64,000 bases of DNA, taken from NCBI GenBank assembly GCA_904063045.1, contig CAJFCJ010000070.1:95496-159495 (forward strand), read 5' to 3'. Origin of the DNA: Dimorphilus gyrociliatus. Taxonomy: Eukaryota > Animalia > Annelida. Of the stretch, positions 3,710-64,000 are shown piece by piece. Made by a program: the position numbers and the translations under genes. The notes below the pieces were generated by a model. The model was given only the letters and a program-made list of their open reading frames with translations. It was not told the origin of the DNA and searched no databases. Position 1 is the first letter of the stretch; every line of letters starts with the position of its first letter.

Positions 3710-4582
3710 TTAATCAGTCATGTTGTCTTCAATCCATTGACGATAAAAGGAAACACGGGCATATCCAGCTGGTCTATTTGGTGGGCAGAAGATGATACCA
3801 AAAGATGTGATACCAGCTATTTGCATAGAGTTGTTGGGTCCAATTGGACAGTTCAATGGGCCACCAGAATCACCCTGTAATAGTATTATATGCACATTTG
3901 TTAAAAGTTCACATTAGTATTTAAAACTTACATTGCATGAATTAGTGGTTTGATCATCATTGTTTAGGCAAATGTGCATGTCATCATCAGCTTGAGGAAT
4001 TCCTTGTGCTTGGCATTCAGCAGTTGAGAGAACACGGGTTTCTGCCTTTTGGAGAATGTTAGCCAAAGGAGCTCCACCAGCTGTACGACCCCAACCAGAA
4101 ATAGTACAAGCTTGTCCAGCCAAAGTTCCAACATTTGATGAGACAAGTGTAGCTGCAGCAACATTTCCAGAAAGGTTGATAGCCTCATCAAATTTCATGA
4201 CACCAATGTCATTAGGAAATCCTAAACTTCCATCATTGACAAAATCAGGGTGAGGTGTAACAATGGATGGAGTTCTAGCTTGAGTCCCAGTTTCATCACT
4301 ATGGGTGTGAAGACCAAAAACCAATCTGTGAGAAGAGAGAACTGGGTTTTGGATACAATGAGCAGCAGTCAAAACCCAGTTTGCATTCATGACAACAGCT
4401 CCACAATTGTGAGAGCATGAGGCTCCAGAGCATCTTTGCAAAGAAACTTGCCATGGAAATTCACCAGGAGAAGCATTTTCTCCACCAACAATGTAGCCAA
4501 CATCAGTGGTCAAATGAACAGGATCACATGGTTTTGCCTCAATGGCAACAGCTACAACAACAAGTAAAGCTAAAACTTTCAT
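3710..4582 (-). CDS. Secreted S1A serine protease, chymotrypsin/elastase-like, resembling earthworm fibrinolytic enzymes (lumbrokinase); 2 exons (4582-3932, 3874-3710)
   Basis: Signal peptide MKVLALLVVVAVAIEA, activation site IVGGENASPGEFPWQVSLQR, triad TAAHC / PNDIG / GDSGGP; a 57-bp GT-AG intron (3931-3875) joins SCN|GDSGGP in frame; no Asp at the S1 position. Confidence 0.95.
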
Positions 4583-10949: not shown

Positions 10950-11100
10950 TGTTTTGAGATAGTGAAAAATCCATATGTGAGTTCTTACAAAGTAAACAAC
11001 ATGAAAGGAATAGCATCTGCTGTTGAATAAGATGTAACAACTTTGACCTGCATCTTTTCCATGTTCTTTGTACCTTTGTTAATTCCCAAGTAAAATATCT
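10950..11100 (+). pseudogene. GPCR TM5-like fragment homologous to 47950-48045
   Basis: gcatctgctgttgaataagatgtaacaactttgacctgc matches gcatctgtttttgaataagatgtaacaagtttgacatgc; reads VTTLTCIFSMFFVPLLI. Confidence 0.35.
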
Positions 11101-11723
11101 AAGTGTACAATAGCTTGTATTGTGCATATATCACTTTTTCCTTTTGAATTGTGACCTATCTGCTATTCTATGTAAGCTTTTATTGATTTTTTTATTCATT
11201 CATAAAATATAGATTACTGTGACGGCTGGTAATATTGAGATATGTTGGAATTTCCCTGTCTTTTAAAATCATATCTGCAACTACAAGAAACACCAACAAC
11301 TGTAATCATTTTTGCTGTTGAATTTTATCATAGGATAGAATTATAATTTGCAGAAAGTCTTAGTATGTATTAATGTATTATATCAATTTATGTTTTCAAA
11401 TCTCTCTGTCTCTTATAAGGTGTATTATTTCATGTCAGAAATGACATTTTGTATATCAGTGGAGGGGGGAGGGGTGTGGCAATATAAATGTATGAGGCCT
11501 GTTCGCTATTTGCAATCAATTAGGGGTTGTAATCTGCAATCTGTGTAATCCAGGATTCAAGTATTTGCGGATTGCGTGGGGAAGTCTTCAGTAGGAGTGT
11601 GTTGAAGATGTGTTTTAAAGCACAGGACAGTCTTGCCAAAAAAGAAATTTCCGTATTTAAAAAGTCAATCGTTGTGTAAGAATGATGTGCTGTACATTTA
11701 ATTTAGTATTACTTTTAGGCAAG

Positions 11724-14700
11724 ATGTCAATTGACAGTCACAACTCAAGACTCTCAAAGAAAAGTGCTATCAATTATGCTTTCACAAAGTATTACAATGA
11801 ATTTGCTGCATTGGCAGAAAAATCTTATTTCTTCAAGGTGATTCTATATACATATTTCATTGAAGGAAAAAAAATGGATTCCCTTACTCTAGACTATATA
11901 AAGGATGTATATGAAAAAGAAGATAAAACAGAAGCAATTAAGATGGCATGGGGTTATTTAAAATATGAAGGAATTCCTCAAACAGTAAAAGTCTTAAAAA
12001 CTTTTCACGAATCGAAAGAACTCGCCGAAAGGATGAGCATATCTTGGCAAACATTAATCAATGAAGTTAAACAACACCATCTAACAAAAAATATGAATAT
12101 TCAACTTCTTCCTTTTGATGAAAATTCAAAAGCCAAAATTCAAAATATTATATCTCCATTAGAAATTTTAAAAGTTAATGCTGAGACAATATTTTCAACA
12201 AATTCTGAAAAATCTAACTACAATTATAAAAACTTTCATAATATTTTCAATACAGAATTCAATAAAATAATTGTTCAAGGTGAACCAGGAATTGGAAAAA
12301 GTGTTCAAGTTAAATATCTTATGAATTGTTGGGCTTTGAATAAATGGGATGATGTTTTAAATGATAAACTATTTCTTGTTATCTATATAAAGAATGTTTT
12401 AAACAATGAAGACATATTCGACTCGATATTGAAGAGTAACTTTCCAGGAGATACAACTGTAACAAAGGATAATATCAGAGATTTTTTCGAAGAGAAACAA
12501 ATGAGAGACGTCTTTCTCTTATTGGATGGAGGTGATGAAATTGACAAATTGAAATTATTAAATGAAAATAAAGAATATTGTATTCAAAATTTCATCGATA
12601 GTTCAAATTGTCCAATTCCAACAGTTGTTTGGTGTAGAAATTGGAAATCAATAGAAATTTTGTCTACTTGCGATGTTGCCTTTGAATTAATTGGTTTCAA
12701 TTCTGATCAATTGAAAAAGTATTTTGAAACAAATTTTATTAATATGCCATGTGATGAGTTTGTTTATGCATTGAACAAAGGAAACGGAAATATAAAGAGT
12801 TTTTGTAGAATTCCTCTCCTAGCAACAATTATTTTCTACTTGTATCATGAAAAGAAATTTGAATTTGAATATGATAATTTATACACAATTTATGAGAATG
12901 CAATTGAACTTATCTTTATAAAAAATGGAATAGAATTGAATGATTTAACAATGGAAACTATTTATAGGCAAAGTTTCCTCTGTTTAGCTGATAATAGAAT
13001 TGGAATGAAAATTGATAAAAACCAATTGAAATCATTTCATAAAGTTTTTAAATGCTTTGCACAAATTTTTAATAATTCTGATAATCCGGAAGAACTTGAA
13101 ATTCAATATTTTCATTTGTCTATTCAAGAATTTTTCGCCGCTAAACATATAATAACAAAATATATGGAAAATCGAATACAGACATCATTATATATTGACA
13201 AACAGTTAAAGGATAAAAAAGTACTCAACATTTATAATACAATGAATCTATTAAAGGAAAAAGATGAAAGTATTTTTAAGCATGTTCTTCTCAATTCTAT
13301 GATATTGGAAAAAGCTTTTCAACTTAGTGATAATATCAAAAGTATCCTTACTGATGATTCTGGTAATAATTCAAAAGTTCAGTTAACAGATGAAACAATC
13401 AGCTATTTAATTCTTGATTTAGTCATTGAAAAGATTAAGAATTCTATTCAAGAACTTATATTACAAAAGGTCAAGACAAATTTCAAGAGATTACTACTCA
13501 AAATTTCAAATACAAGTATGATAAAACTGAAAAAAATCCATTTATCAATAGAAAATTTCAATCATTTAGTTTTGAATGATGCAGAAGTAATGAAACAATT
13601 TTTGGTTTTACTACAAAATGATACATTGAGATATTTTGACACTCAAAGATTTCATTTAAACGTAATCTTTGAAAATGATGTCAAATGTATTAAAATTGGT
13701 AATAGATTTAACAGTTTTAATATTTCTGCTAATAGAAATTTATCAAATTCAAATAATAAAAGAATGGAAATTCAGGATAATGGATCTAAATTTAAAAAAA
13801 TGTGGCAATTATTATCAATAACTGATGGATTTGATAATCTTATAAATGAGATTATCAAATATTATAGTTTAACTACATTTGATATTCATGAACAATATTT
13901 ATCTGAGAATCAACTCAAAGCTTTGACAATTATGTTTTCTACATTTTCCCAAACTCTTTCAAATGTTAAATTGAATGTAGGAAAATTGAATGAGAGTACT
14001 GCAAAAATTCTATACAGTTTTATGGACAGTTTAACATACTTGAAATCATTTTCTCTCACATCTTCTAAATCAGATAGCGGGACTAAGTGTTTTATAGATA
14101 AGATAATGGAATACAAGCGTACCTCTTTAGAAAGTTTAAAGATAAAACTGTTATCCTATACATCACTGGAGTGTATATCATTGAGTGGTCTACTAGAAAA
14201 ATTTCCTAAACTAAGATACTTGGAGATTTCAGGTTTAAATGTTACATTTGCAAATCATGAAATGAATGATATTCTCTTGGATGAGATTGAAAATATATGT
14301 CTGGAAAACTGTTTTTTGAATGACAAGCAAGCTGAAATAATTGTCAACAAGATACATAATAATAGTAATTTTGATGATTTATTACGAAATCGGCAATTAG
14401 GTGATGCGTTGATAGTTCTGCAAAGACACTTTTTAGATTTCAACAAGACATTGAGAAATATATCAATAAAATTTTCACAAAGATTTACCTATATGGATTT
14501 AAGAGGAAAAGTCATCTCATTGTCCAATTGTCATCTGCAGACAATTGAAAATGTGTCATCTTTTGACAAGAATAATGTTTTTCAGCAAAGTCTTGGCTTG
14601 AGAAATTTCGAAGAAAGTATTCCATCTCTCTCCATTTTTAAATGCCATTCAAGTGATAAGAATAATGATTGCCAGCAAGAAATCTTGTGCAGTTACCTAA

Positions 14701-15929
14701 GATCTTGTAAGAATTTGGAACATTTTCATATTCAATCAGAAAATGACGTTTTCGAATATAAAACAATTTTTCATTCACTCTCATCATCTTCTAAAAACTT
14801 CCTTAAAGTTATCAATGTTAGCTCTGCCATCCAATCGGAGGCTTCCGGTTTGGCATTTGCGGAACTGCTTGACAATTGTAAATGTTTGGAAAATATTGAT
14901 ATAAGCTCAAATAGTTCAATTGGAGAAAGAGAATTTGAAAAGATTTTATTATCCCTAGCAAATTCATTGGCAAAGTTGAGCCATCTAAATCTAAGTAAAT
15001 GCAATTTGTCAACTTTAAACATTAAAACTCTTAACAAACTGCTGAAACAATGCTCATCAGTTGTTTATATTGATATAAGTTTTAACAAATCAGTTTATTC
15101 ACTGTTTAATTCACTTGTAGAATCTTTAAAGCAATCATCTGGTGTGTTTAAACACCTCAATGTAAGCAATTGCTCTATAACAAATGAATCAGCTCATGAA
15201 GGTTTAAATAATTTAAGATATTTTCCTCATCTGGAATTTTTGGATGTCAGTTCAAATGCAGAAATTGGTAGTGCTATTGCTAGATTGAAAAAATCTTTGG
15301 AGAATTCTAATTCATTGAAATATTTAAAATTCAATAATTGTAATATATCTAAACAGTTCAGAAGACGGCAGACAGTAAAAAATCAGTGGTTTCCTGCTCT
15401 TGAATATTTAGATTGTAGTTGTAATCCGGGTATTGATAATGATATTGGTATTATTGTCACCCTTTTGGGAAGATCATTTGAGACTCTAAAGTATATCAAT
15501 TTGAGTAATTGTCATATAACTGAAGATATTGGTAAACAGTTTGCTGTAAATCTTCAAAGATTTCAGTATCTAGAACATTTAGATTTAAGCTCAAATAGAG
15601 CAATTGGGAATTCTATAAATGATATATTAAGTTCTCTGGAAAGCTCTTCAGAAACAATGAAATATCTCAACTTTAGTGACTGTAAAATGACAGAAGAGTC
15701 TGGTAATTATCTGGAAAAGTATTTGAAAACTTTTTCCTCACTAGAATATTTGAATATCAGAAGAAATGGAAATGTTTGCAAGAGTTTAAAAAATATTACA
15801 AAATCTTTATTGGAACTATCAAAAACATTAACTCATGTGTATATTGATTTCTGCGGCCTTTCTACCTCAGACAGGCCTATAGTTGAATCCTTACTACAAT
15901 CACTATCTCTTGAGGACTTTGAATTGTAA
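11724..15929 (+). CDS. NLR-type receptor: death-fold (CARD-like) N-terminus, NACHT, C-terminal RNI-like LRRs; single coding exon (ORF open from 11682)
   Basis: Walker A IIVQGEPGIGKS, Walker B FLLLDGGDE, CRIPLLA, FHLSIQEFFAA, then repeated LxxLxLSxN/CxL units; 1415 codons without a stop in very AT-rich DNA. Likely ATG at 11724, just after an AG acceptor. Confidence 0.93.
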   Translation: MSIDSHNSRLSKKSAINYAFTKYYNEFAALAEKSYFFKVILYTYFIEGKKMDSLTLDYIKDVYEKEDKTEAIKMAWGYLKYEGIPQTVKVLKTFHESKELAERMSISWQTLINEVKQHHLTKNMNIQLLPFDENSKAKIQNIISPLEILKVNAETIFSTNSEKSNYNYKNFHNIFNTEFNKIIVQGEPGIGKSVQVKYLMNCWALNKWDDVLNDKLFLVIYIKNVLNNEDIFDSILKSNFPGDTTVTKDNIRDFFEEKQMRDVFLLLDGGDEIDKLKLLNENKEYCIQNFIDSSNCPIPTVVWCRNWKSIEILSTCDVAFELIGFNSDQLKKYFETNFINMPCDEFVYALNKGNGNIKSFCRIPLLATIIFYLYHEKKFEFEYDNLYTIYENAIELIFIKNGIELNDLTMETIYRQSFLCLADNRIGMKIDKNQLKSFHKVFKCFAQIFNNSDNPEELEIQYFHLSIQEFFAAKHIITKYMENRIQTSLYIDKQLKDKKVLNIYNTMNLLKEKDESIFKHVLLNSMILEKAFQLSDNIKSILTDDSGNNSKVQLTDETISYLILDLVIEKIKNSIQELILQKVKTNFKRLLLKISNTSMIKLKKIHLSIENFNHLVLNDAEVMKQFLVLLQNDTLRYFDTQRFHLNVIFENDVKCIKIGNRFNSFNISANRNLSNSNNKRMEIQDNGSKFKKMWQLLSITDGFDNLINEIIKYYSLTTFDIHEQYLSENQLKALTIMFSTFSQTLSNVKLNVGKLNESTAKILYSFMDSLTYLKSFSLTSSKSDSGTKCFIDKIMEYKRTSLESLKIKLLSYTSLECISLSGLLEKFPKLRYLEISGLNVTFANHEMNDILLDEIENICLENCFLNDKQAEIIVNKIHNNSNFDDLLRNRQLGDALIVLQRHFLDFNKTLRNISIKFSQRFTYMDLRGKVISLSNCHLQTIENVSSFDKNNVFQQSLGLRNFEESIPSLSIFKCHSSDKNNDCQQEILCSYLRSCKNLEHFHIQSENDVFEYKTIFHSLSSSSKNFLKVINVSSAIQSEASGLAFAELLDNCKCLENIDISSNSSIGEREFEKILLSLANSLAKLSHLNLSKCNLSTLNIKTLNKLLKQCSSVVYIDISFNKSVYSLFNSLVESLKQSSGVFKHLNVSNCSITNESAHEGLNNLRYFPHLEFLDVSSNAEIGSAIARLKKSLENSNSLKYLKFNNCNISKQFRRRQTVKNQWFPALEYLDCSCNPGIDNDIGIIVTLLGRSFETLKYINLSNCHITEDIGKQFAVNLQRFQYLEHLDLSSNRAIGNSINDILSSLESSSETMKYLNFSDCKMTEESGNYLEKYLKTFSSLEYLNIRRNGNVCKSLKNITKSLLELSKTLTHVYIDFCGLSTSDRPIVESLLQSLSLEDFEL

Positions 15930-17122: not shown

Positions 17123-18000
17123 TTATGGAACATAAATATTAGATGTTTGAACTAATAATTCATCTGCTAAAAGCCCTCCTAGTCTATAATTTTCCCAAAT
17201 TTCAAATATTTTTCTTTCTATCTCAATATACTGCTTTTTTTGGTATTTGATAATCTTCTTCTCAGACATAAGGTTTTCATAGATAATAACTAAATCAGCT
17301 TCTCTCTTCAGTTCATCAAGCAGCCAATAAAATGATCCTTTAGATGGTACTTTATTATTCATTCTATTGTGCCATCCTTCCACACTGTTATTAGTCGTTA
17401 TGGATAATCCATATATAGACCAATTCTCTGTTTTCCATATAGAGTTCATAATCCAAGTTGCTTCAAAATATTCCAACAAGTCTGCAAATTTTTCTTTTTC
17501 TGTAAGTTGAGATATCAATCTGTAAAATGTTGGAGCAATGATATGAGCAGGCAGAAAAGGTAAAGCCATCAGCTTTCTCATGTCTCTCCAGTCTTCTCCT
17601 TTCTCCATATACTTTCCAGAGTATCCAAGAAACTTGAAGGATCATAATTGTAAAAACAAACCTTAAAGGTAAAATTAAATGTTTTACCTGTATTTTCCTA
17701 TATATTGCTAGTGTAAAATGGAATACACATCCATGAATTTGTGATTCTGGATATATTTTGGACACAGCTCTCCACAGACCCATCTCAAAATCAATTGTTA
17801 TCTTCTCAGGCTGTGACATAAAAATAAATGCGAATGGAATATGTTTCATTTCACCATCTTTTTTGATATAGCTGTGTATAGATAAGAGCTGATAAAAAGG
17901 ATCCTTTACCATTTTAAATGTCCCATCAATGAACCAGTGTTTTGACTGACCAAGCAAATTAAGTTGATGGCTGCTACCAAAAATAAGAATTCTCTCTTTA
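17123..18000 (-). mobile_element. Mutator/MULE transposase with a spliceosomal intron (17687-17633)
   Basis: WFIDGTFK...DFE...GCVFH...RKLMALPFLP...TTNNSVEGWHN (D,D,E + CxxH). Removing a 55-bp GT-AG intron fuses ORF 17463-17957 to ORF 17123-17608 in frame; about 20 aa appear missing between FMSQ and PEKITIDFE. Confidence 0.85.
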
Positions 18001-18211
18001 TTTTCACAGATGTGTAGTATTGCTCTAAATCAACTAGATTTAATAAAAGGAAGACATTTACTATACTAATAATAATGATTTAAAATAAAATTTGCTAAAA
18101 AATTTGGTATTAAAGTAATATACACAACTATCAGAGATAAATCGACTAGGTTTTTATCATGAATTTTCTAAGAAACTATATTATTGCTCACAGCTTGATT
18201 GTTTGCAGCGA

Positions 18212-22849: not shown

Positions 22850-23250
22850 ATGTCTAGATGAAAATACTTTTGCGTTGAAGAGAAAAACTGCTATGATGAA
22901 AGTGATGAGAAATGCTCAATTCAGAGTCTAAAAATTGTTTCTAAGTAACATTGCTATGGTCTTAATTTCAAAATTTAATGACATAAGCTAACATATTCTA
23001 ACAATGCATTTAACATTTTTCAATACGGTTTTGATACATTTCTATTTGGCATCAATAGCAACTGAATTGTTTTAAGAGTTGAAGTTCTTGTAAAGATAGA
23101 GAGAAACTAGTTTTCAAAACTGTACATTCCAGTGCATTCAATCATTTAGATATGTATAATTCTGTACACTCAGAAATAGTGATATATTAATATTTAGACT
23201 TTAGATATAAAAGGAACATTAGAAGTACTTTTATTTCATAGAATGGGATT
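22850..23250 (+). pseudogene. LDLa + LRR remnant (GRL101/LGR-like ectodomain)
   Basis: CDKRQCLDENTF..EKNCYDESDEKC followed by VHSSAFNHL-type LRR fragments, heavily disrupted. Confidence 0.35.
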
Positions 23251-23299
23251 GATGGAACTTTAGATAATAGATGGGACTATTACATAATCAATAAAGGAA

Positions 23300-24480
23300 A
23301 AAATAACTTTAAAAAAGATGGATGTCAAAGTGGTTTTATATTACCTAAAACCAGGTGGTGATAAGACAGACTAAACTGCTCTTTTGGATTAGAACTCATT
23401 TACTCAATACTCTATAATCCTTTGACCAATTGAACCCAAGCTTTGGGAAATGTATAAAAGGAAATGCATTTCCCCAGCTTGTCAGTTCAGTTCTTTAACT
23501 GGTTGTTTAAAGTTCATAAGTTTTTAATTTGTTTGGTTTAATACCACACCAGTTGTTTTGGTAATAGAACAGATATAGATTAACATTACTGGCACTACTA
23601 AAATTGATATTTTTTAATAGAGAACTTTTACATAAAAGTCAAATCTTAAAGGTAAGAAGGCTTTTATTTTCTAACAATTATCATATTTATATAGAAATTT
23701 CTTTTTAGCCTTTGATATTTTTAAAGAAAGAGAAAAACTAAATTTTTCACTAAAGTTTTGAACATTCTTTCCAGGATTAACATTAATAAAGAATTTTATG
23801 AAAAATGCAATCATTTTTATGTATTAAAATCATTAATTGGATCTATTGCTTTTATGCTTAATAAATCAATATCTTTTAAAGACAAAAATAGCAAGGTAAT
23901 TAAAGATAGAATTTGTAAATAAAAGGCCTAATTACAGAAAACTTGTTAGTTTTAATTTTTTTTGTTAAACAGGAATGTGGAACATTTGTTTATTAATTTT
24001 CATTAGAAAAACTTGCTGTTGAGTGATAAAGAAATTATTCTTTGGACGAAATACTGGTGTTTTGTTGATTCATTTCTAATTACATTTGTTAGACTATTTG
24101 TTGACGAACTTGAAAGGTTCTATTTGTGTGAGTACTTTGGCAAATTGGTAAATGATTGGAAAGGACAATTACAGCTGCGATGAACCAGAAATTCCTACTT
24201 TCGTTTGTTGCAAACAATTCATATCTCCCCAACTTCTCTCTATTTCTTTGTATATAGCACATTCATAGTCTAATTAGTTATGGAGACTTCTCAATTTTCA
24301 GTTAGTTAATCCAGGTTTTAGGTAGTTTTTAAAGAATGGATTGGGGCAAACCTTTTTGTTTTTCTAACATTAGTTTTTAAAAAAGGTTTGTTGAGGAGTT
24401 AAGATTGTATGAAATTTTACAGGCTTAATGATTTCTAATGAAAAGACTTTTCAAATTTCTGGTCATCATAGCATATTGAA
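23300..24480 (-). pseudogene. LGR-like 7TM GPCR remnant (family C)
   Basis: NESRNFWFIAAVIVLSN (TM1-like) and NAFPFIHFPKLG...VLSK (ICL2/TM4-like); DNA homology with 42190-42500, 47700-47870 and 48920-49245. Confidence 0.45.
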
Positions 24481-40533: not shown

Positions 40534-41105
40534 GGGATCAACAGAAGTCACCCAGGACAGACGACGCTGAGAAATAGGCATAAGTCGCCCAGAACTGTGA
40601 TTGAAGTTGCCCACAGACAGAACTTGCAATTAAGAATTCCTCCACATCCTTATTAGTTCTAATTGCATGTTGATATACTGACCATTGTTTTAGTGACCAA
40701 GTATCATTCATAATCTGAGACCTGAACAAATCTGTCATTCTATATCTTTGTACTGAAATGCTCCCGTTTCTATTCTTACGCCCTCAACATATTAATATTT
40801 AGAATATCATCAAGGATAATGTTCGGCTACCAGAAGACGTAACAAACACGCCACCACAGCTATATTTATGTGTCGAATATGTAAGCAATTTGTTGCTGGC
40901 TTATTACTACTTTCCAGTCCACGGCTTTGAGCATCTACAAACTTTGCCTGGACCTTTTGACTTCCGGGGGGGATTGTAGATCCATTTCGGATATTATTTG
41001 TAATATTCGTTATTGTTTTATGCAGTTCTTTTACGGGTGAATTGAAGTCAAAGGAATGGTTAAAAACGATATGTCCGACCTCTTGCTGGATTTGTCTTGG
41101 CAATT
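40534..41105 (-). mobile_element. MULE transposase remnant with family-E terminal repeat
   Basis: gggatcaacagaagtc(a/g)ccc sub-repeats at 40534-40620 identical in design to 47489-47580; minus strand WSLKQWSVYQHAIRTNKDVE and LLRLLVAEH are MULE C-terminal motifs. Confidence 0.7.
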
Positions 41106-42189: not shown

Positions 42190-42500
42190 GTTTTCAAAGC
42201 AGCATTCCAATATTCTTCTCTCTTTTCATAGCTTGTCAGTTCAGTTCTCTAACCGTTAACTAGTTGTTTAAACTTGCTTGTTTAGAACTAGAAAATCATT
42301 TACTCAGCATTTTGCTAATTAATTTCTACCGAAATTACATTGATTAAGACTATTTGTGGACGAACTTGGAAAGTTCTATTTGTGTGAGTACTTTGATAAG
42401 TTGATAAATAATTGGAAAGGACGAATACTGTTCTGAAGAAACAGAAATTCCTACAATTACTATACAACAAAGATATTGTTCACAAAAATTTCAAGATTTA
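42190..42500 (-). pseudogene. LGR-like GPCR fragment (family C)
   Basis: gttctatttgtgtgagtacttt and cttgtcagttcagttct shared with the 23.4-24.2 kb and 49.0-49.2 kb copies. Confidence 0.45.
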
Positions 42501-47209: not shown

Positions 47210-48702
47210 AGGAGAATAGGCCTATAACATCAAATGATCCTTTTTTGAAATAAATATTGAATTTCTTCCTGACAATTTCCTGCAAAGAGATGCTTCATTT
47301 GGAAATCAGAGAATAATCAAATTTGTAATCTATTGTCCCAAAACAAAGTTTGGTATTTGGATGGTATGTTTATGGTTGTCAAAGAACCATTTTTTCAACT
47401 TTTCTCCAATCCTTCCTTTATAAAGAAAGATGAAGAAACAAAGTAGATTCCTTTGACATTTATGTCCATGACATCAAAGAAGAAGAAAGGGATCAACAGA
47501 AGTCGCCCACTACCCATGGCAGAAGTCGCCCAGAACTGTGATTGAAGTCGCCCAGGACAAAGCAGAACTCGCCCTGTGCACTTATTAAAATTGTATAAAT
47601 AGACGAAGTTGAATAGAGACTATTTTTTCTTGTTCATTTCAAATAGAGAGTAATTTCTGAATAAAGTTCAGAACATTTTTGCAAAACTTCTGATGAAGTC
47701 ATCTGAAATGATATGTATGAGTTTCTAGTTCTATATAAGCGAATTTAAACAACCAGCTAATGGTTACAGAACTGAACTGAACTGTCAAACTGGAGAAATG
47801 TATTTCCTTTGATACATTTACCAAAGCTTGGGTTACCTTGGTCAAAGGATTGCAAACTTGAAATGTAACAGTCTCACAATGCATATATAACAAAAACATG
47901 AAAAACTATTGCATCACTTATGGCTAAGATGTGGCACTGCAAAAACAAACCTGCCTCTTCTGCATCTGTTTTTGAATAAGATGTAACAAGTTTGACATGC
48001 ATTTTTTCTATATTGTTTGTTCATTTGTTAATTCCATAATGACACCATCTTTTATGGTCAAAGAATCTATTTCCCACGAAATAAAGGTCTTTTTAAAGTT
48101 ATAGAATCTAATTCTACTAAATAGAAGTCTTTCTCAAGCTCGATAATTATAATTCCTATGAAATTACCTTTTTTGTAAACTTCCACAAATATAATTCCTA
48201 CGACATAAAAGTCATTCTATAGTTGCACCATTATAATTGCTATGAAATAAAAGCCTTTCTAAAGTTCTATGATATCTGAAGTCTATTACATTATTATTTC
48301 TAAGTGCACATCATTTCTTGTTTTATCCCTGAAAAACTTAAATAAATCAACAAAAGACTTTAAATATTTAAAACAACAAGAAAAAAGATATTTTCCCACT
48401 TACTGGGGCGACTTCTGTCATTCATCTGGGCGACTTCTGCCTTAGTTCTGGGCGACTTCTGCCATGGGCGACTTCTGTCCTGGACGACTTCTATCGTATT
48501 CAAGAAGAAAGCATATATACAAGTATTAAGGGTAACTTAACAAATATTTCATCTGCCCTCATATTCTTGAGGAAATTCCAACACTTACAAGTTAATAAAG
48601 TTTCTCATTTTGCACCAACTATATTATTTTATTATTTGCTTCTATTTCCTTTAAAATTAAAACGGTTGCTTTGCAAAAAGGGGACGAGTTTTCCAGTTCC
48701 CC
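47210..48702 (+). mobile_element. MULE transposase remnant (intron-bearing) interrupted by element E
   Basis: EFLPDNFLQRDASFGNQRII...WYLDGMFMVVKEPFF...KKDEETK.IPL...MTSKKKK|AYIQVLR resumes in frame across the duplicated TSD; TIR-like end ggggacgagttttccagttcccc at 48680-48702. Confidence 0.75.
47489..48501. mobile_element. Non-autonomous MULE (element E, Pack-MULE-like) carrying a GPCR gene fragment
   Basis: Inverted terminal arrays of agaagtcgccc (47489-47580) and gggcgacttct (48405-48501); perfect 9-bp TSD aagaagaaa (47480-47488, 48502-48510); interior 47700-48045 homologous to GPCR families elsewhere in the window. Confidence 0.88.
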
Positions 48703-48919: not shown

Positions 48920-49245
48920 TTCAATTGTTTAAAGACATTCCAGAACAAGGTATCATGTGGATTGATATAATTTCTGTACTTTGTTACATTGTAATTGTAG
49001 GAATTTCTGCTTCTTCAGAACAGTATTTATCCTTTCCAACCATTTACCAACTCACCAAAGTACTCACACAAATAGAATCTTTTGAAGTTCCTACACAAAT
49101 AGTCTTAATCTATGTAAGTTTGGTAGAAATCAATCAACAAAACACCAATATTACGTGCAAAGACTATATATTGAGTAAATGAGTTTCTAGTTGTAAACTA
49201 GCAAGTTTAAACAAGAAGCTGACGGTTAGAGAACTGAACTGACAA
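48920..49245 (+). pseudogene. LGR-like GPCR fragment (family C), ends at a 10-N gap (49246-49255)
   Basis: Reverse-complement match to 42190-42500 and 24050-24200. Confidence 0.45.
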
Positions 49246-51011: not shown

Positions 51012-52690
51012 TCAAGTTTCATTTTTACAATGTTTAGACATTTCCATTGAGCTAACAAAACTATATGTTCTACTGGAAAGCTTTTTAATTGGAAATTTTG
51101 AAGATTGGCGCCATGTATAAATTATACCACCAAAAATTCCAATGAGAATACAAATAGCAATTATTAAGCCAATGCCAAGTCCAATTTTTAAACCAGTTCT
51201 ATCATCAGAAGTCACAATCTTTGTGTTTATATCTAATGAAAACTGTACACAAGTTTAAGATATTAGATAGAAAAGATAAGAGCTCAATAGATAATAAGAG
51301 AATAGATAATATAAGAGTAGAGATTTATACCTTTTATCAGATCAGTTTGGCATACAAAGGGAAAGATATTTTCAGAGCAAATATGGCTTCTCCGATGGCC
51401 ATACAAAGAAGTACATAATGTCACACAATGTCCTTCTCTGTCATCAATATGATAAAAATATCAAAAACCTAAGTGATTTCCATTTTCCCAAATATAATTA
51501 CCACTATTTCCTCTCTTTAGGCCAATCCATAATCCCTCCATAAAATTAGGTAATTATTTTGTGGCATATTTTTCAATGAAAAAATTTTCTTCAAATGATG
51601 TTACTTCTGCTAAAGTGCCATTAATTCTTCTGCAAAATGCTTTTCAAAATTTACAAATATTTTCATTTCAAATACAAAACATTTATTATCAAACACTTTC
51701 CAAATGCCAGATTGAGAAAGTTTTGTGGGACAATGTCCTCATTCTGGGCTAGGAGTTGTTGGATAAGGCAGTTTTGGAACTTTGCATATGTAACCTGATG
51801 TTGAATGGCTATCACTACACAAGCGTCTCCTCCAGGAGCCAGATGTTTCTTGATGCCCACCATTATAAAGCACAACACATTTGCCCTGTTTATGACCAGT
51901 CCTGCTCCAAAATTGAAATGTTAGAGGAGTGTTATCCATCCAGTTATATGGACAGCCATAGTCTTTCCAAAATAGACCAATCTTCAAACTAACAGTATTT
52001 GGATATCTTTTAGCCATCATAGCTAGCCAAACTTGTTCTGAAAGGTCCTTAATACTGACCAGTCTGCTTTTGCTCCAGCCTTTTCGAATACATCCATGAA
52101 GTGCTTCTTTAAATGAGTTGGTTTTGTGTTCATCAAACAGATAGCAATAACTGCCATGACTGATCCACTTTTCACTATTAGGGCAAAGTCCATGAACAGA
52201 AGAGGTTGTCAGTGGAATGCCAGCTTGTATTTTACATATACTTTCAAGCTTTGTGCTACAAGGAAAGCCTTTCCATTTTCCATTTGGTGAAAGAGCCACA
52301 CAGTGATCTTCATCTCCAGGATATACATCCCAAATTGTAAAACCACTGTTGTATGATCACTCCAGTTATATAAGTCTGTAGCATTATTCCTATACATTCC
52401 AATCCAAATGTGATAATGTAGTCCTTCATTTAATGACATAGAATGAACAGAAGCCAAATTCATTTCCTAAAAAGTGTAACACTTAATAGAAAATAATTGT
52501 TAATAAACAATCAATTGATTTACCTGATTTTTACAGGAATTTAAAGATTCTTTCCAGGTTTTCTTGTCTTTTTGTATACTATAACATCCATCCCCTAGAA
52601 ATTCTCCTTTCTGACAAATTGTTTTCTTTGGAGGGGTTGTAGATGTCAAATTAATTTGATCTGAGTTCAAATATATAATTAAAAGCAAGT
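51012..52690 (-). pseudogene. Multi-C-type-lectin type I membrane receptor (mannose-receptor-like) pseudogene
   Basis: Three CTLDs (GCYSIQKDKKTWKESLNSC..WIGM..CVALSPNGKWKGFPC; YCYLF..SFKEALHGC..IGL..SWRRRLC; KCFVF..WIGL) and a TM segment IGLGIGLIIAICILIGIFGGIIY; 1-bp frameshift near 52340, TGA at 51739 and later stops. Confidence 0.85.
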
Positions 52691-53318: not shown

Positions 53319-53811
53319 ATGTATTTTTCAAAAAGTCCAATCTGCTGTACTTTACATATAACGAGTGAAGAAGCCAAAGGATGGGGTTTTTCATTCATAG
53401 TTTTCGGCCTATTAATATCACTAATTTGCATAATAATTTTAATATTTTATATTAAAATATGGAAGCAAACTTTAGATAGAAAGAGATTAATTAATAGAAA
53501 TCAATTTAAAACTCAACAAAAGAAACTCAAATTTAATGCTTTTATCATTGTTGCTACAAATTTATGTTGTTGGTTTCCAATCTCCTTGTTAGGTAATTCA
53601 AACAAACAAATAAACAAACGTCTCTTGAACGATCCTTTGTTCAGGAATATATTCTGTACTCTTTCATTTGGTGTTGAAGAAGGAAATCTATATTATGTTT
53701 GTTGTTGTCATCCTACCATTAAATTCAATCATCAATCCCTTTATATACACTTTAAGGGATGTGAAATTGTATTATGAAAGGAATCAGGCTAAACTCAAGA
53801 AACATATGTAA
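53319..53811 (+). pseudogene. Orphan ECL2-TM5-TM7 end of an LGR/GRL101-type GPCR
   Basis: SPICCTLHITSEEAKGWGFS...IIVATNLCCWFPISLLG|52-bp intron 53593-53644|IFC...(+1 frameshift)EIYIMFVVVILPLNSIINPFIYT; no upstream TM1-4 nearby. Confidence 0.75.
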
Positions 53812-55342: not shown

Positions 55343-56323
55343 TTACTCGACCAAAGCGACATCTACATTTCTAGAAGAAATCCTCCCCATAATATTTTTA
55401 TAGAATGTTTTTGTTTGAATTCTTATAGAGGATTTAGTATAGCCGTGAACCAGCGGGTTTACTGTTGAATTTGAAGCCATAATCGCCGTAAATGAATCAA
55501 ATAGTAATATAAACTGGGAATCAGAAAGAGTATATTTCATTCCTTGTCGATTGTAATGAATGACAATTAATACGGCTGATAAACTCCAAAACAAACAATT
55601 CATTATCAATAGACATGTTAAAACTGGTATACTACTGCCTTTAGATTCTAAATTAACGGCGTTCACTCTATCAGAAATTCTTTTTCTGTGTCTTCTGATC
55701 GCTTGAAGAATGGGAATGTAGAGTAAAAGGCTTGCAAATGAACTCGGTAACACTGTACTAAACGACCAAAAGTGAAGATAAGAAAATGAGAAAACTCTTA
55801 AAATATCGCATTGAAAACTATCATTCCTATTCAAACTTAATTCGTAACGATTCCAACCTAAAACCGGAAGTGAACAAACAAAAACGTTAAAGAACCATAT
55901 AGCAGAGAGTAGGATAAAAGCCCTTCTAGTTGTCCATAGTTTAGAGAAGGTTAACGGTTTTACAACTGCCATAAACTTTTCAAATGTGATTAGAGTCAAT
56001 GTAAAACAGGAGATTGAAACTACAAAGAAAATAACTTGAAATCCGCAAAGACAACTGTAATAGCTTATATCATAATTATGCAGAATTATGAATATGAGTA
56101 ACGTCATTGAATATAAGATATCGGTAAATGTCAATGCAGTCACACCAAAGTTATGTAATTTCCATAAATCTTTATTAACCGTATGAATTATTATTAAATT
56201 ACTGTTTAAAAGTAGGCCAATAATTTGAGCGCAACCAGAAAATATCGATATATAAATGCTCACGTACGCCATCTTTATTAATCTACAATTTTTTGATAGA
56301 AAAAGAAGCATCAAACCAAACAA
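55343..56323 (-). CDS. Intact single-exon rhodopsin-class orphan GPCR
   Basis: Seven hydrophobic segments; GLLLNSNLII (TM1), LTFTDIL (TM2), ITFEKFMAVVKPL (DRY variant EKF), LPVLGWN (TM4), CLFWS (TM6), NSTVNPLVHG (TM7). Confidence 0.9.
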   Translation of the reverse strand: MFGLMLLFLSKNCRLIKMAYVSIYISIFSGCAQIIGLLLNSNLIIIHTVNKDLWKLHNFGVTALTFTDILYSMTLLIFIILHNYDISYYSCLCGFQVIFFVVSISCFTLTLITFEKFMAVVKPLTFSKLWTTRRAFILLSAIWFFNVFVCSLPVLGWNRYELSLNRNDSFQCDILRVFSFSYLHFWSFSTVLPSSFASLLLYIPILQAIRRHRKRISDRVNAVNLESKGSSIPVLTCLLIMNCLFWSLSAVLIVIHYNRQGMKYTLSDSQFILLFDSFTAIMASNSTVNPLVHGYTKSSIRIQTKTFYKNIMGRISSRNVDVALVE

Positions 56324-61125: not shown

Positions 61126-63146
61126 AGTATTGTAAACGTACCATATGTGACTTTAAATGCTCTGACGAGAATGAACTTTGTCCGCCCTCTTGCCAGCTAT
61201 GTGAAGATTATAGCTACAATGGTAACTGATTGATAACTGAAATATGGAATACTAAAGGTTTACGTTTCTAAAAAATATATAAACAGCGTGTCGCAAGCTA
61301 GCCAATTTGCATCTTTCTTTTTCAAAAAATTCTCCTATTTTTTAATTCATTCAATTTTTAAAAATTTTTGAAAAGGATTATTTTTCAAAAATATATTGTA
61401 CAACTTTGGTTATATTTTACATGCTTGAACTCTATTATTTTATGCAACATATACATGTACATCTTAAAACCTACGCAAGAAAATGCTATAACATTGGCCA
61501 AACATAAGTCTGATTAGTCAGCTTGAAGGCTCATCTTTAATTACCAATAAAGGTTTGGCCAAGTTATAATTTAATTAACTTGCCTAGGGTGTGGCCAAGT
61601 TATAATTCAATTAACCTTCCTAAATGTTGAACCTTGTAACATCCTGTTACTAAAGATAAATATGAACTACACATTTCGGCAACTGTAAAGTGATGATTGG
61701 ATGTCAGAGACAAACCTCAAAGTATATAAATCCTCATTATTCTCATTTGGCATGCAGCTTCCATCTGGACCCAAGGACCTGGGAAAATCATCTGGAAACA
61801 ACCTCCACTGGAACCATCCATCTACTCCTCAACATTGGAAGACAGTTTGGTAATTTGGCAACCTGCTATTACAAACTATCTACTCTGCTATTGAACTCTC
61901 ATATTGTTACTTGCTTAAGTATTATTATTGCGAATAAACCATTTTAATTTAAACATTTGTTTAAAGGTTCGAGTAGAACCAGTATTGTTATAACTTGCAA
62001 ACGCATAGATTTTGCCAGCAAGAGCAGTACAATATTTATATATATATATATATGTATACCAGTTTATTTTATCTTATCATTAAACTTGAATAATTCTACA
62101 TTAAAACAATTTCTAACTGAATTTTATTTCCCCAATCTTATATTTCTACAACTTTCAAATGTCTATTTTGAGATTGGATATGTATCAAAATCAATTTTTA
62201 ATCTAACACAAATTCAAAGTTTCAAACTGGAAAATGTTCATATTGAATCACGTGATAATTATATTTCTTTTTCTGGTATTATTCAATTACGTAATTTACA
62301 CTTGAATCGGATAAACATACATTATTTAAGTAGTGAATCATTTTTTAAACTTTCAAAACTTAAATATTTGAAAATAATCAATTGTCCAATTAAATCTATT
62401 GAAGAAGATGCATTTAAACATATTTCTAATCTAATAAGTTTGATATTTCATCGGGTAGTTCTTCCATCAAATTTAACCAAGAATTTTTTTAAACCATTAA
62501 TAAAACTTGAGTATTTCCGGAGTGAAAATTTCAAACTATGCTGTTTTATATCACAAATTCTTTCTCAGAAGATAAAATGCTATCCATTCATTTCAAATAA
62601 TCAAATTTGTGAACTATTACTAGGTTCACACGTGCTCAGAGTGTTTACTTGGATTTTAGGAATATGTGGATTAATTTTCAATATCCTATCAATCTTCTTG
62701 AGAATTTTCACATTCAAAAAATCAACAGCTATATTTTATTGTACTCTAGCATTTGCTGATTTGGTAGGATCTATTCAAACTGTAATATTTGCAATCAAAG
62801 ACAGCGAACTTAATGGCATATATATGGAAAATGAAAGTTTATGGAAATCCAGCAAACTATGTTCTATTGTAGGCTTATTTTCAACATTTTCGCTTATTCT
62901 ATCAACTACCAGTTTATTATTAGTGACTGCAGAAAAATATAGCGAAATTGATAATATAGGCGTTGGTAAATTCAGCCTATTAAGAGTAGTTATTTTATCA
63001 TTATCTAGCTGTCTTTTTGCATCGATATTGGCTGTGTTACCTTTATTCCTCTATAAAGTGAGCAACAGTATATTGTTTTTCTTCCATTTGTATAATTTAA
63101 TAATTCACAGGCCTACTACGAGCAATTTTCCACCTGTGTGTTTTAG
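61126..63146 (+). pseudogene. GRL101/LGR-type LRR-GPCR, truncated after TM4/ECL2; exons about 61126-61221, 62063-63057, 63111-63146
   Basis: Cys-rich exon (CDFKCSDENELCPPSCQLC) splices in phase 1 to LRRs (IEEDAFKHISNL), hinge FKLCCF..C..ICELLLG, TM1 LRVFTWILG, LAFADL, W.SS.LC, LLLVTAEKY; after a phase-0 intron AYYEQFSTCVF* stops. Confidence 0.8.
61460..62015 (+). mobile_element. Repeat family A, longest copy, inside the LGR intron
   Basis: Continuous homology with 36565-37045 and 8312-8674. Confidence 0.75.
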
Positions 63147-64000
63147 TAAATCCACTGCTCTTTACAGGCATGCTAATATCACAGATTTTGAAACAAAGAA
63201 AACTTAATAACAGAAATAAAAGGTCATTGATTGATTGATTGATTGAAATTAAGAAAAACCTTGTAGAATGATTATTGCTTTCATTGCAAACTGCAGTTTA
63301 TTGAAAATATTCAATTGGAAACAAATAATAAAAGTAAATTTGTTATTTCATACTTTCATGATCACTCATTCACACCTTTTTTTCAATATAGATTTAATAT
63401 TTTTGAAAGGCCTATACAAGAACTTTATAATACAAGATGAAGATCAAAAACCATTTGAGAAAACAGATACAAACAAAAAATTGACTTGAAAGATTTACAA
63501 CATATACATTCTTTCCTTTTGTCCAATGACAGCAATGGATTACTGTGTAAAGAATTCATATTCACTCAATTTTAAAGAAAATGCTATTTATCCACTGGCT
63601 AGTGATTAATTACACATATATTTGTTACATATTCATAATCAAATCATTTTTTTCCCTTCAGAAGAGATGTTATTACTATTCTTATGACGCTATTGAATGT
63701 TTTAATGAACAATACCAACAAAAATACATGTTCGATTTTGGATTTTATATTAGGCAGGCGTTGCAAAAAGAATATGTTCAAAGAAAAATGGGTGATCAAT
63801 TTGTTTGTTCAAGCAACAAACAACTTTATACATTATCACCTATGAATCATATGTACAAATCATAAATATATATATATATATATATATATACTGCATATAT
63901 TTAATAAAACATTAACAACTATTGAAATTTCATCCCTTCAACTTTACAACCAGTAATTCCTTTTCAAAATTTTCTAAATGCCCAACATTTGTATTTTCAC

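What the first reader, a model, noticed from the sequence alone, without database searches (positions are those of the whole stretch)
47489..48501. Pack-MULE-like element in an animal carrying a host GPCR fragment
Seen: a 1013-bp element with sub-repeated inverted termini and a perfect 9-bp TSD. Its interior 47700-48045 matches GPCR-like sequences elsewhere (ccaaagcttgggtt...ggtcaaaggatt 27/31 with the 23.4-kb copy; the TM5-like block with 11.0 kb) and reads roughly TM3-TM5, followed by imperfect ataattcctatga repeats. Known: Pack-MULEs that capture gene fragments are well documented in plants and rarely in animals. Inference: MULE transduction may explain the scattered GPCR fragments in this window.
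Basis: partly seen in the sequence, partly recalled or inferred. Interest (0 to 1): 0.75.

Follow-up and report, generated by a model that had tools for sequence, protein, structure and literature searches.

The report
Mutator transposon carrying a retrotransposon scrap
The 1013-base element is a real, recently mobile, non-autonomous Mutator-type (MULE) transposon, but its interior is a piece of a retrotransposon's long terminal repeat rather than a captured receptor (GPCR) gene, so this is ordinary transposon-in-transposon debris.

Summary
The observed anatomy is confirmed. Window 47489-48501 is a discrete element with the 11-nt motif GAAGTCGCCCA repeated near both ends and a perfect 9-bp target-site duplication (AAGAAGAAA). 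The assembly holds two more intact copies with the same interior, each with its own 9-bp duplication, plus one older interrupted copy.

Elements with the same ends encode a FLYWCH zinc finger and a MULE-type DDE transposase. The Mutator call is therefore right.

The GPCR reading fails:
- No frame of the interior matches 7tm_1.
- The window's real GPCR genes have no similarity to the interior.
- The "GPCR-like" matches at 23.4 kb and 11.0 kb are other fragments of the same repeat.

That repeat is a ~755-bp long terminal repeat (LTR) with TG...CA ends and a polypurine tract upstream. Its 27-nt end motif occurs 490 times in the genome. It belongs to an RT- and env-bearing Ty3/gypsy element, probably the published "Dingle" family.

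The element keeps ~600 bp of this LTR, and the LTR's own terminus sits exactly at one junction. The most likely history is that a retrotransposon inserted into a MULE, a deletion removed most of both, and the remnant was then mobilised in trans.

The scan has already noted FLYWCH-MULEs, and one MULE with an LRR gene fragment, elsewhere in this genome. This element has low novelty.

The parts
47480..47488 (.). Left copy of the 9-bp target-site duplication AAGAAGAAA
   Evidence: The empty-site comparison with paralogue L033 is gap-free across the junction.
47489..47579 (-). MULE terminus on the transposase-3' side: GGGATCAACAG followed by GAAGTCGCCCA-type subterminal repeats (three exact, one degenerate)
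   Evidence: The same end is seen in L033, L065 and the 957-bp MITEs.
47580..47706 (-). MULE 3' UTR plus the last ~54 nt of the transposase ORF, read antisense on the + strand
   Evidence: Element positions 165-218 match the end of the transposase ORF in L031-L034 (89%) and L073 (98%). tblastn places residues 125-153 of the last transposase exon at 47652-47738 (-). Junction alignment.
47707..48310 (-). Fragment of a Ty3/gypsy (Dingle-like) LTR: LTR nucleotide 1 at 48310, running leftward to about nucleotide 568, with an 8-bp internal deletion. This is the supposed 'GPCR cargo'.
   Evidence: 83-88% identity to many genomic copies of a ~755-bp repeat with sharp ends. LTR features. No 7tm signal.
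48068..48270 (.). 42-bp minisatellite that belongs to the LTR; the window copy has one unit more than the C76 and C128 copies
   Evidence: (families D1, D2) and alignment. The minisatellite is present in free LTR copies (reference sequence).
48311..48405 (-). Unique MULE sequence on the transposase-5' side, resuming exactly at the LTR terminus
   Evidence: Homology to MULE relatives L066, L070, L071 and L072 starts at element position 821/822.
48406..48501 (-). Five inverted GGGCGACTTCT-type subterminal repeats and the terminus CTATCGTATTC
   Evidence: Matches the first 105 bases of the L033 MULE copy at 82%.
48502..48510 (.). Right copy of the 9-bp target-site duplication AAGAAGAAA
47244..47488 (+). 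Insertion target: decayed exon of an older MULE transposase (VWYLDGMF...MTSKKKK). It continues after the element at 48511 to about 48560 (AYIQVLRV).
   Evidence: tblastn at 59.6% identity to the L033 transposase. DNA identity about 70%. Alignment and translation.

Best explanation
Window 47489-48501 is a non-autonomous Mutator-like element (MULE). It keeps both ends of a FLYWCH/DDE-transposase MULE family: an 11-nt terminus, several GAAGTCGCCCA subterminal repeats that are probably the transposase binding sites, the 3' UTR, and the last ~54 nt of the transposase ORF. The rest of the transposase gene has been replaced by ~600 bp of the LTR of an env-bearing Ty3/gypsy retrotransposon (Dingle-like).

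Most likely history (inferred):
1. The retrotransposon, or its solo LTR, integrated into a MULE about 190 bp from the MULE's transposase-5' end.
2. One internal deletion, or an interrupted gap repair after excision, removed everything from inside the LTR to 54 nt before the transposase stop codon.
3. The remnant kept functional ends and was moved in trans by transposase from full-length relatives. This gave at least four insertions, each with a 9-bp duplication.

The window copy landed inside an older, decayed MULE transposase exon. The element carries no GPCR sequence and no coding capacity.

Shown: element boundaries, duplications, copy set, shared junctions, LTR identity of the cargo, transposase family of the partners. 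Inferred: the order insertion then deletion, and mobilisation in trans.
For: Element and mobility:
- Three intact copies share both internal junctions letter for letter and are 97.3-97.8% identical to each other. Each has a different 9-bp duplication: AAGAAGAAA, TGTTTTAAA, and CCTTAACCC/CCCTAACCC.
- Each junction sequence occurs exactly three times in the assembly, always together.
- A fourth, older copy in L071 has the same LTR/MULE junction, interrupted by a ~206-bp insert.
- The empty-site paralogue aligns gap-free across the insertion point.

MULE identity:
- Long copies with the same ends (L031, L033, L034) encode FLYWCH PF04500 at 36-37.5 bits.
- Searched exon by exon, L033 gives the two colinear halves of MULE PF10551: profile positions 1-50 at 15.0 bits and 62-98 at 15.6 bits.
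- DGTF, LDYE, CLFH and NNDVEGFH motifs are visible in the translations.
- The window paralogue at 17463-17957 scores 29.7 bits on PF10551, above the 27.6 cut-off.
- L065 is colinear with the element except that its transposase region stands where the LTR piece sits.

Cargo is an LTR:
- The ~755-bp repeat has sharp ends, TGTGCAC...AAAGTACA on its true strand.
- Its 27-nt end motif occurs 490 times, against 0 for the control.
- Five-bp duplications CTGCA and GATTA flank two solo copies.
- A purine tract AAAAGGGTGGGATATC lies directly upstream where the repeat follows a 673-aa ORF with a C-terminal membrane anchor.
- That ORF family lies at a constant ~1117 bp from the LTR's far end at six loci. 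RT (PF00078) lies at a constant 2611 bp (2590 at one locus) at five loci.
- One direct LTR pair, C63:44982 and C63:55472, brackets both env and RT.
- The genome paper describes such an env-bearing gypsy, Dingle, as the most abundant TE class and lists MULEs among the DNA transposons (PMC7854359).

Insertion then deletion: the LTR's terminal nucleotide lies exactly at the junction with MULE sequence.
Against: - No progenitor survives in the assembly, meaning a MULE with a whole LTR or whole retrotransposon at this site. The order of events is therefore inferred.
- The second copy of the retrotransposon's own 5-bp duplication would have been lost in the deletion, so it cannot be shown.
- An exact LTR 5' end could also come from a reverse-transcription intermediate used as filler DNA.
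- phmmer of the env-like ORF against PDB gave no glycoprotein B hit. Identity with the published Dingle sequences was not tested.
- Only 2 of about 13 distinct LTR copies show a perfect 5-bp duplication.
Confidence: 0.75

Rival explanations
1. Pack-TIR-style acquisition. The LTR piece was never integrated into the MULE by the retrotransposon's integrase. It was copied in as filler DNA during repair of a MULE excision gap or by replication-fork or template switching. The template would be either a genomic LTR copy or a reverse-transcription intermediate, such as plus-strand strong-stop DNA, which naturally begins at LTR nucleotide 1.
For: - The left junction has at most 1-3 nt of microhomology, as in end-joining or template-switch products.
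- Multicopy Pack-TIRs formed by fork switching and then transposition are documented in animals (PMC8277862).
- Three independent breakpoints cluster at LTR reference positions ~183-205: the L033-type MULE 3' UTR, this element, and the C104 copies. This hints at a preferred end such as a U3/R boundary.
Against: - A genomic-template switch would hit the exact LTR terminus only by chance, roughly 1 in 750.
- Insertion plus deletion explains the exact terminus without further assumptions.
- No U3/R boundary has been mapped.
- Other LTR fragments in the genome have many different breakpoints.
Confidence: 0.2
2. One reading: a Pack-MULE that captured TM3-TM5 of a host GPCR gene, with MULE transduction spreading GPCR fragments around the window.
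For: - Real 7tm_1 genes lie 5-8 kb away, at 55343-56323 (73.6 bits) and 53319-53777.
- The interior does match other places in the window.
- Another agent reported a MULE in this genome with an LRR gene fragment (note s1-080393, not checked here).
Against: - No 7tm_1 hit in any stop-free piece at E<=10.
- No tblastn hit of the window's GPCRs in the element at E<=10.
- The matching places are LTR fragments lacking MULE ends and ORFs.
- The repeat has hundreds of copies with LTR hallmarks.
Confidence: 0.02
3. Not one element: two unrelated solo MULE ends happen to flank an LTR fragment, and the 9-bp repeat is a chance match in A/G-rich sequence.
For: - The duplication AAGAAGAAA is low-complexity.
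- A solo MULE end does exist at 40534 in the same window.
Against: - The whole structure recurs at two other loci with identical internal junctions and different 9-bp duplications.
- The empty-site paralogue shows exactly one copy of the 9 bp.
Confidence: 0.01

Closest known systems
Internally deleted non-autonomous MULEs (general knowledge, for example maize Mu1-type elements relative to MuDR); animal FLYWCH-bearing MULEs of the Phantom/Muta group and PHD-bearing Rehavkus (PMC6446971, Table 1)
   Same: - 9-bp target-site duplication and inverted ends.
- Partners encode a FLYWCH zinc finger plus a MULE DDE domain. A small PHD-like first exon is visible in L033.
- A minisatellite downstream of the transposase is listed for Rehavkus and for aphid Phantom elements.
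- The non-autonomous copy keeps only the ends and depends on transposase supplied in trans.
   Different: - The terminal 11 nt are only loosely inverted (6/11). Recognition probably rests on 4-5 subterminal 11-mers per end rather than on a long perfect TIR.
- The minisatellite here belongs to the inserted LTR and not to the MULE.
- Placement within Phantom, Rehavkus or another clade was not tested, because no reference transposases were at hand.
Pack-MULEs of plants (Jiang et al. 2004, cited in PMC6446971) and Pack-TIRs of animals (Tan et al. 2021, PMC8277862)
   Same: A MULE with non-MULE DNA between its ends that has transposed with that cargo, giving several copies with the same cargo and different duplications.
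   Different: The defining feature, cargo copied from a host gene, is not met. The cargo is another transposable element's LTR, and its exact LTR terminus points to nested insertion plus deletion rather than transduplication.
Dingle, the env-bearing Ty3/gypsy LTR retrotransposon family described for Dimorphilus gyrociliatus (PMC7854359)
   Same: The cargo's parent repeat behaves as the LTR of an abundant element with RT and a downstream envelope-like ORF that ends in a membrane anchor. This is the architecture the paper describes.
   Different: Sequence identity to published Dingle copies was not tested. The organism name comes from earlier scan notes and from agreement with the paper (genome size, TE classes), not from a direct test here.

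Membership tests
Mutator-like element (MULE), non-autonomous | Target-site duplication of 8-11 bp | tested here: met
   Nine bp in all three intact copies: perfect in the window and C128 copies, 8/9 in the C76 copy. The empty-site paralogue agrees.
Mutator-like element (MULE), non-autonomous | Inverted termini shared with transposase-encoding elements | tested here: met
   43-nt arms are 88% complementary. The same ends bound the 2.5-5.9-kb copies L031-L034 and L065, and many ~957-bp MITEs.
Mutator-like element (MULE), non-autonomous | Partner transposase carries the MULE DDE domain (Pfam PF10551) | tested here: inconclusive
   Searched exon by exon, by reference, with the spliced join deliberately not made. 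The end of L033 exon 2 scores 15.0 bits on profile positions 1-50 and exon 3 scores 15.6 bits on positions 62-98. The two halves are colinear, but each is below the 27.6-bit cut-off. The D/D/E and CxxH motifs are visible. The 46-47% identical window paralogue passes at 29.7 bits.
Mutator-like element (MULE), non-autonomous | WRKY/FLYWCH-type zinc finger N-terminal to the DDE domain, common in animal MULEs | tested here: met
   PF04500 at 36-37.5 bits (cut-off 23.6) in L031, L033 and L034.
Mutator-like element (MULE), non-autonomous | No transposase of its own | tested here: met
   The longest stop-free piece is 68 aa, with no Pfam family. Only the last ~54 nt of the transposase ORF remain.
Pack-MULE / Pack-TIR | Internal sequence copied from a host (non-TE) gene | tested here: not met
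   The interior is a fragment of a ~755-bp LTR whose end motif occurs 490 times. No host-gene similarity was found.
Pack-MULE / Pack-TIR | Same cargo in several copies with different target-site duplications | tested here: met
Rhodopsin-type GPCR (7tm_1) fragment | Match to Pfam PF00001 or to neighbouring GPCR genes in some frame | tested here: not met
   No 7tm_1 hit for ten stop-free pieces at E<=10. tblastn of both window GPCR ORFs finds nothing in 47489-48501 at E<=10. The whole-genome PF00001 scan was uninformative, because only the top 147 of 1132 candidates were scored.
LTR of a Ty3/gypsy retrotransposon (Dingle-like) | TG...CA termini and a polypurine tract upstream of the 3' LTR | tested here: met
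   TGTGCAC...AAAGTACA on the true strand. AAAAGGGTGGGATATC abuts the LTR where it follows the env-like ORF.
LTR of a Ty3/gypsy retrotransposon (Dingle-like) | Direct pairs flanking gag-pol(-env) | tested here: met
   Shown by coordinates only. The pair C63:44982(+) and C63:55472(+) brackets env at C63:46099-48009(-) and RT at C63:52376-52861(-). The RT-to-LTR distance is constant at 2611 bp at C12, C40, C45 and C63 (2590 at C61). The env-to-LTR-end distance is ~1117 bp at C5, C35, C49, C59, C60 and C63. No full-length copy could be read.
LTR of a Ty3/gypsy retrotransposon (Dingle-like) | Short (4-6 bp) target-site duplication around solo LTRs | tested here: inconclusive
   Perfect 5-bp duplications in 2 of about 13 distinct copies (CTGCA, GATTA). 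The other copies are 8-25% diverged from the reference copy and show none.
LTR of a Ty3/gypsy retrotransposon (Dingle-like) | Sequence identity to the published Dingle elements | not tested
Only the architecture agrees (PMC7854359).

The most novel reading that the evidence does not exclude
The LTR piece may not be a leftover of an integrated retrotransposon. It could be a captured reverse-transcription product: a U3-only fragment that starts at LTR nucleotide 1 and stops near a putative U3/R boundary. The R-U5-like piece fixed in the 3' UTR of the L033-type MULEs would be its counterpart. That would mean this MULE family repeatedly patches its excision gaps with retroelement cDNA and then spreads LTR promoter modules around the genome.
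Probability: 0.12. Interest if true: 0.4.

Novelty: new member of a known kind. Interest (0 to 1): 0.15.

Why it matters
The main value is as a correction. There is no receptor-gene capture here, and the "scattered GPCR fragments" in this window are LTR debris, so they should not be counted as evidence for MULE-driven gene shuffling in this animal.

On the positive side, the locus documents four things:
- A young MULE lineage: three copies 97.3-97.8% identical to each other, each with its own duplication.
- The recognition ends of that lineage.
- A clean example of how nested insertion plus deletion makes chimeric non-autonomous elements.
- MULE and gypsy elements repeatedly inserting into each other in the TE islands of a very compact genome.

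Tried and rejected
- Whole-genome PF00001 scan. Uninformative: only the best 147 of 1132 candidates were scored, and even the window's own GPCR is not listed.
- Rfam on the element and on a full LTR copy. Only sub-threshold noise, so there is no tRNA or SINE head. The SINE idea was dropped.
- Helitron, Transib and hAT readings of the ~755-bp repeat. Rejected because the ends are TG...CA, a polypurine tract and an env ORF adjoin it, and it pairs around RT.
- phmmer of the env-like ORF against PDB. No glycoprotein B match. The paper needed profile methods for this, so the env call rests on position and the C-terminal membrane anchor.
- Phage collection search with the element. Nothing found, and the collection is not relevant to this element.
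- Fetching full-length retrotransposon copies. LTR pairing was shown from coordinates instead.
- Search for a progenitor with only one of the two junctions. None exists.
- The spliced transposase model was not joined or searched as one protein. Its exons were searched apart by reference.
- The large protein searches were not used, because family scans and genome searches settled the question.

Full report
**1. The observation**

The sequence at 47489-48501 is as described.
- The element begins GGGATCAACAG and ends CTATCGTATTC.
- The nine bases AAGAAGAAA stand directly outside both ends.
- The 11-mer GAAGTCGCCCA, allowing one mismatch, occurs 11 times in the 64-kb window against 0.13 expected by chance. 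Eight of the matches lie in the two ends of this element, in opposite orientation. The other three lie at 40544-40613.
- The interior matches the window at 23416-23511, 11013-11086, 42236-42299 and 49179-49242.
- It carries a 42-bp minisatellite at about 48068-48270.

**2. It is a mobile unit**

A search of the window's own assembly (77.9 Mb, 349 contigs) found two further near-complete copies, at C76:5948-6852 and C128:60966-61824.
- Their flanks show different 9-bp duplications: TGTTTTAAA (perfect) and CCTTAACCC/CCCTAACCC (8/9).
- The three copies are 97.3-97.8% identical over ~820 aligned bases. They differ by one minisatellite unit and by the number of subterminal repeats.
- Both internal junction sequences occur exactly three times in the genome, always together.
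- A fourth, older copy (L071, C72) has the same right junction, split by a ~206-bp insert that has its own 8-9-bp duplication.
- The window copy sits in a decayed transposase exon. With the element and one duplication copy removed, the flanks align without a gap across the junction to the homologous exon of another copy (L033). They read ...MTSKKKK|AY....

**3. Superfamily**

The same termini bound many ~957-bp MITE-like elements and several long copies of 2.5-5.9 kb: L031, L032, L033, L034 and L065.
- The long copies encode a FLYWCH zinc finger, PF04500, at 36-37.5 bits.
- The L033 gene is split by introns.
- The end of exon 2 matches positions 1-50 of the MULE domain PF10551 (15.0 bits). Exon 3 matches positions 62-98 (15.6 bits). 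The halves are colinear, but each is below the 27.6-bit cut-off.
- The translations show the usual MULE signatures DGTF, LDYE, C-x-x-H and NNDVEGFH.
- A 46-47% identical paralogue in the window (17132-18092, minus strand) passes PF10551 on its own at 29.7 bits.
- L065, the closest long relative, is colinear with the 1013-bp element, except that ~2 kb of transposase gene stands where the element has its foreign interior.
- Element positions 165-218 are the antisense of the last ~54 nt of the transposase ORF.

The element is thus a deletion derivative of a FLYWCH-MULE.

**4. The cargo is not a GPCR**

The window has genuine rhodopsin-type receptor ORFs at 55343-56323 (7tm_1, 73.6 bits) and 53319-53777.
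- tblastn of both ORFs against the whole window gives no hit inside the element, even at E<=10.
- The ten longest stop-free pieces of the interior, in all frames, gave no 7tm_1 hit at E<=10.
- The sites at 23.4 kb and 11.0 kb have no ORF of note.

**5. What the cargo is**

Element positions 229-823 match more than 500 candidate places in the genome. Aligning copies shows a discrete ~755-bp repeat with sharp ends. The first look with a full copy gave 866 candidates, and a 27-nt end motif occurs 490 times against 0 for the reversed control.

Read on its true strand, the repeat runs TGTGCACTTAG...CAAAGTACA, that is TG...CA.
- Two solo copies have perfect 5-bp duplications, CTGCA and GATTA.
- In at least four copies the repeat's start is preceded by the same sequence. 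This is a purine tract, AAAAGGGTGGGATATC, about 120 bp after the stop of a 673-aa ORF that ends in a hydrophobic anchor.
- That ORF has dozens of relatives, some inside open frames of 1700-2850 aa.
- RT domains (PF00078) lie upstream of it on the same strand.
- The RT-to-LTR distance is 2611 bp at C12, C40, C45 and C63, and 2590 bp at C61. The distance from the env-like ORF to the far end of the LTR is ~1117 bp at C5, C35, C49, C59, C60 and C63.
- At C63 two LTR motifs 10.5 kb apart, in direct orientation, bracket both env and RT.

The repeat is therefore the LTR of an env-bearing Ty3/gypsy element. Earlier scan notes name the animal as Dimorphilus gyrociliatus. The genome paper for that species gives a 73.8-Mb genome, an env-bearing gypsy family called Dingle as the most abundant TE class, and MULE and Mariner as the DNA transposons (PMC7854359). 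That fits, but I did not test the species or identity with Dingle directly.

The other "GPCR-like" pieces in the window map to LTR reference positions as follows:
- 11013-11085: positions 443-515.
- 23163-24198: a decayed whole copy.
- 42230-42472: positions 5-272.
- 48975-49245: positions 1-269.

None of these has MULE ends.

**6. How the chimera arose**

At the right junction the LTR ends with its terminal ...GTGCACA at 48310. MULE homology in four relatives resumes at the very next base, (A)TCATTTCTTG.

At the left junction the MULE runs to ...GTCATCTGA at 47706. The LTR picks up at about reference position 187, with at most 1-3 nt of shared bases.

An exact LTR terminus is what integrase leaves behind. 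The simplest history is integration of the retrotransposon (or its later solo LTR) ~190 bp inside the MULE's transposase-5' end. A single deletion or aborted gap repair then ran from inside the LTR to just before the transposase stop codon. Transposition of the remnant followed.

The alternative is copying in of LTR DNA or cDNA as filler. It cannot be excluded, because no progenitor survives. One oddity also keeps it alive: three independent breakpoints fall at LTR positions ~183-205. These are this element, the C104 copies with a different junction, and an older LTR-end remnant fixed in the 3' UTR of L033-type MULEs and of the 957-bp MITEs. I give this alternative about 0.2.

**7. Comparison and verdict**

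The element works like any non-autonomous MULE and meets the tested membership features. The one caveat is that the DDE domain of its own partners was seen only as two sub-threshold exon halves.

It resembles a Pack-MULE or Pack-TIR (PMC6446971, PMC8277862) in carrying foreign DNA and transposing with it. It fails the defining feature of host-gene cargo.

The scan has already noted FLYWCH-MULEs, and one MULE with an LRR gene fragment, elsewhere in this genome. I used those notes only as leads.

Nested TE debris of this kind is common, so interest is low. The useful result is the correction of the GPCR reading and a clean description of a young MULE lineage and its ends.

Noticed in passing
window 40534-40723: A solo MULE end of the same family (GGGATCAACAGAAGTCACCCA plus two more subterminal repeats), followed by a scrap of the transposase C-terminus on the minus strand (40634-40723). 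No matching opposite end occurs in the window.
   Followed up: partly
window 17132-18092 (-): Another MULE transposase paralogue, 46-47% identical to the L033 protein. One ORF (17463-17957) passes Pfam MULE PF10551 at 29.7 bits. It lies just downstream of the 1415-aa NACHT-LRR ORF at 11682-15929.
   Followed up: partly
L033:3396-3524 (also L031, L032, L034 and the 957-bp MITEs L035, L036): The 3' UTR of this MULE subfamily contains an older remnant of the same LTR (reference positions 1-32 and 86-182, 75-84% identity), starting at the LTR's other terminus. With this element (~187-754) and the C104 copies (~203-754), three independent breakpoints cluster at LTR positions ~183-205, next to a TATA-like TTTAAAT.
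   Followed up: partly
L071:974-1188 (C72): A ~206-bp MITE with inverted ends GGATGCAACAGAAAACATCCACAAATGAG / CTCATTTGTGGATGTTTTGC and internal CCCTAA-like repeats. It is inserted with an 8-9-bp duplication exactly at the LTR/MULE junction of an older copy of the element. The C76 copy of the element is in turn inserted in a similar CCCTAA-rich element.
   Followed up: no
L075 (C104:7000-16999): A 6.18-kb unit repeated at least four times in tandem. Each unit holds a truncated LTR copy and a 191-aa ORF with a sterol-sensing domain (PF12349, 24 bits).
   Followed up: no
L074:215-2236 (-) (C100): An intact 673-aa envelope-like ORF with a C-terminal membrane anchor, next to a 3' LTR. The upstream pol region of that copy is replaced by FLYWCH-MULE insertions, so MULEs also insert into the retrotransposon.
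   Followed up: partly
window 3914-4582 (-), 11682-15929 (+), 51739-52299 (-), 61957-63207 (+): Host-type ORFs in the window: trypsin domain, NACHT-LRR, C-type lectin and an LRR protein, besides the two GPCR ORFs at 53319-53777 and 55343-56323. This looks like an immune- and receptor-gene neighbourhood riddled with TE fragments.
   Followed up: no
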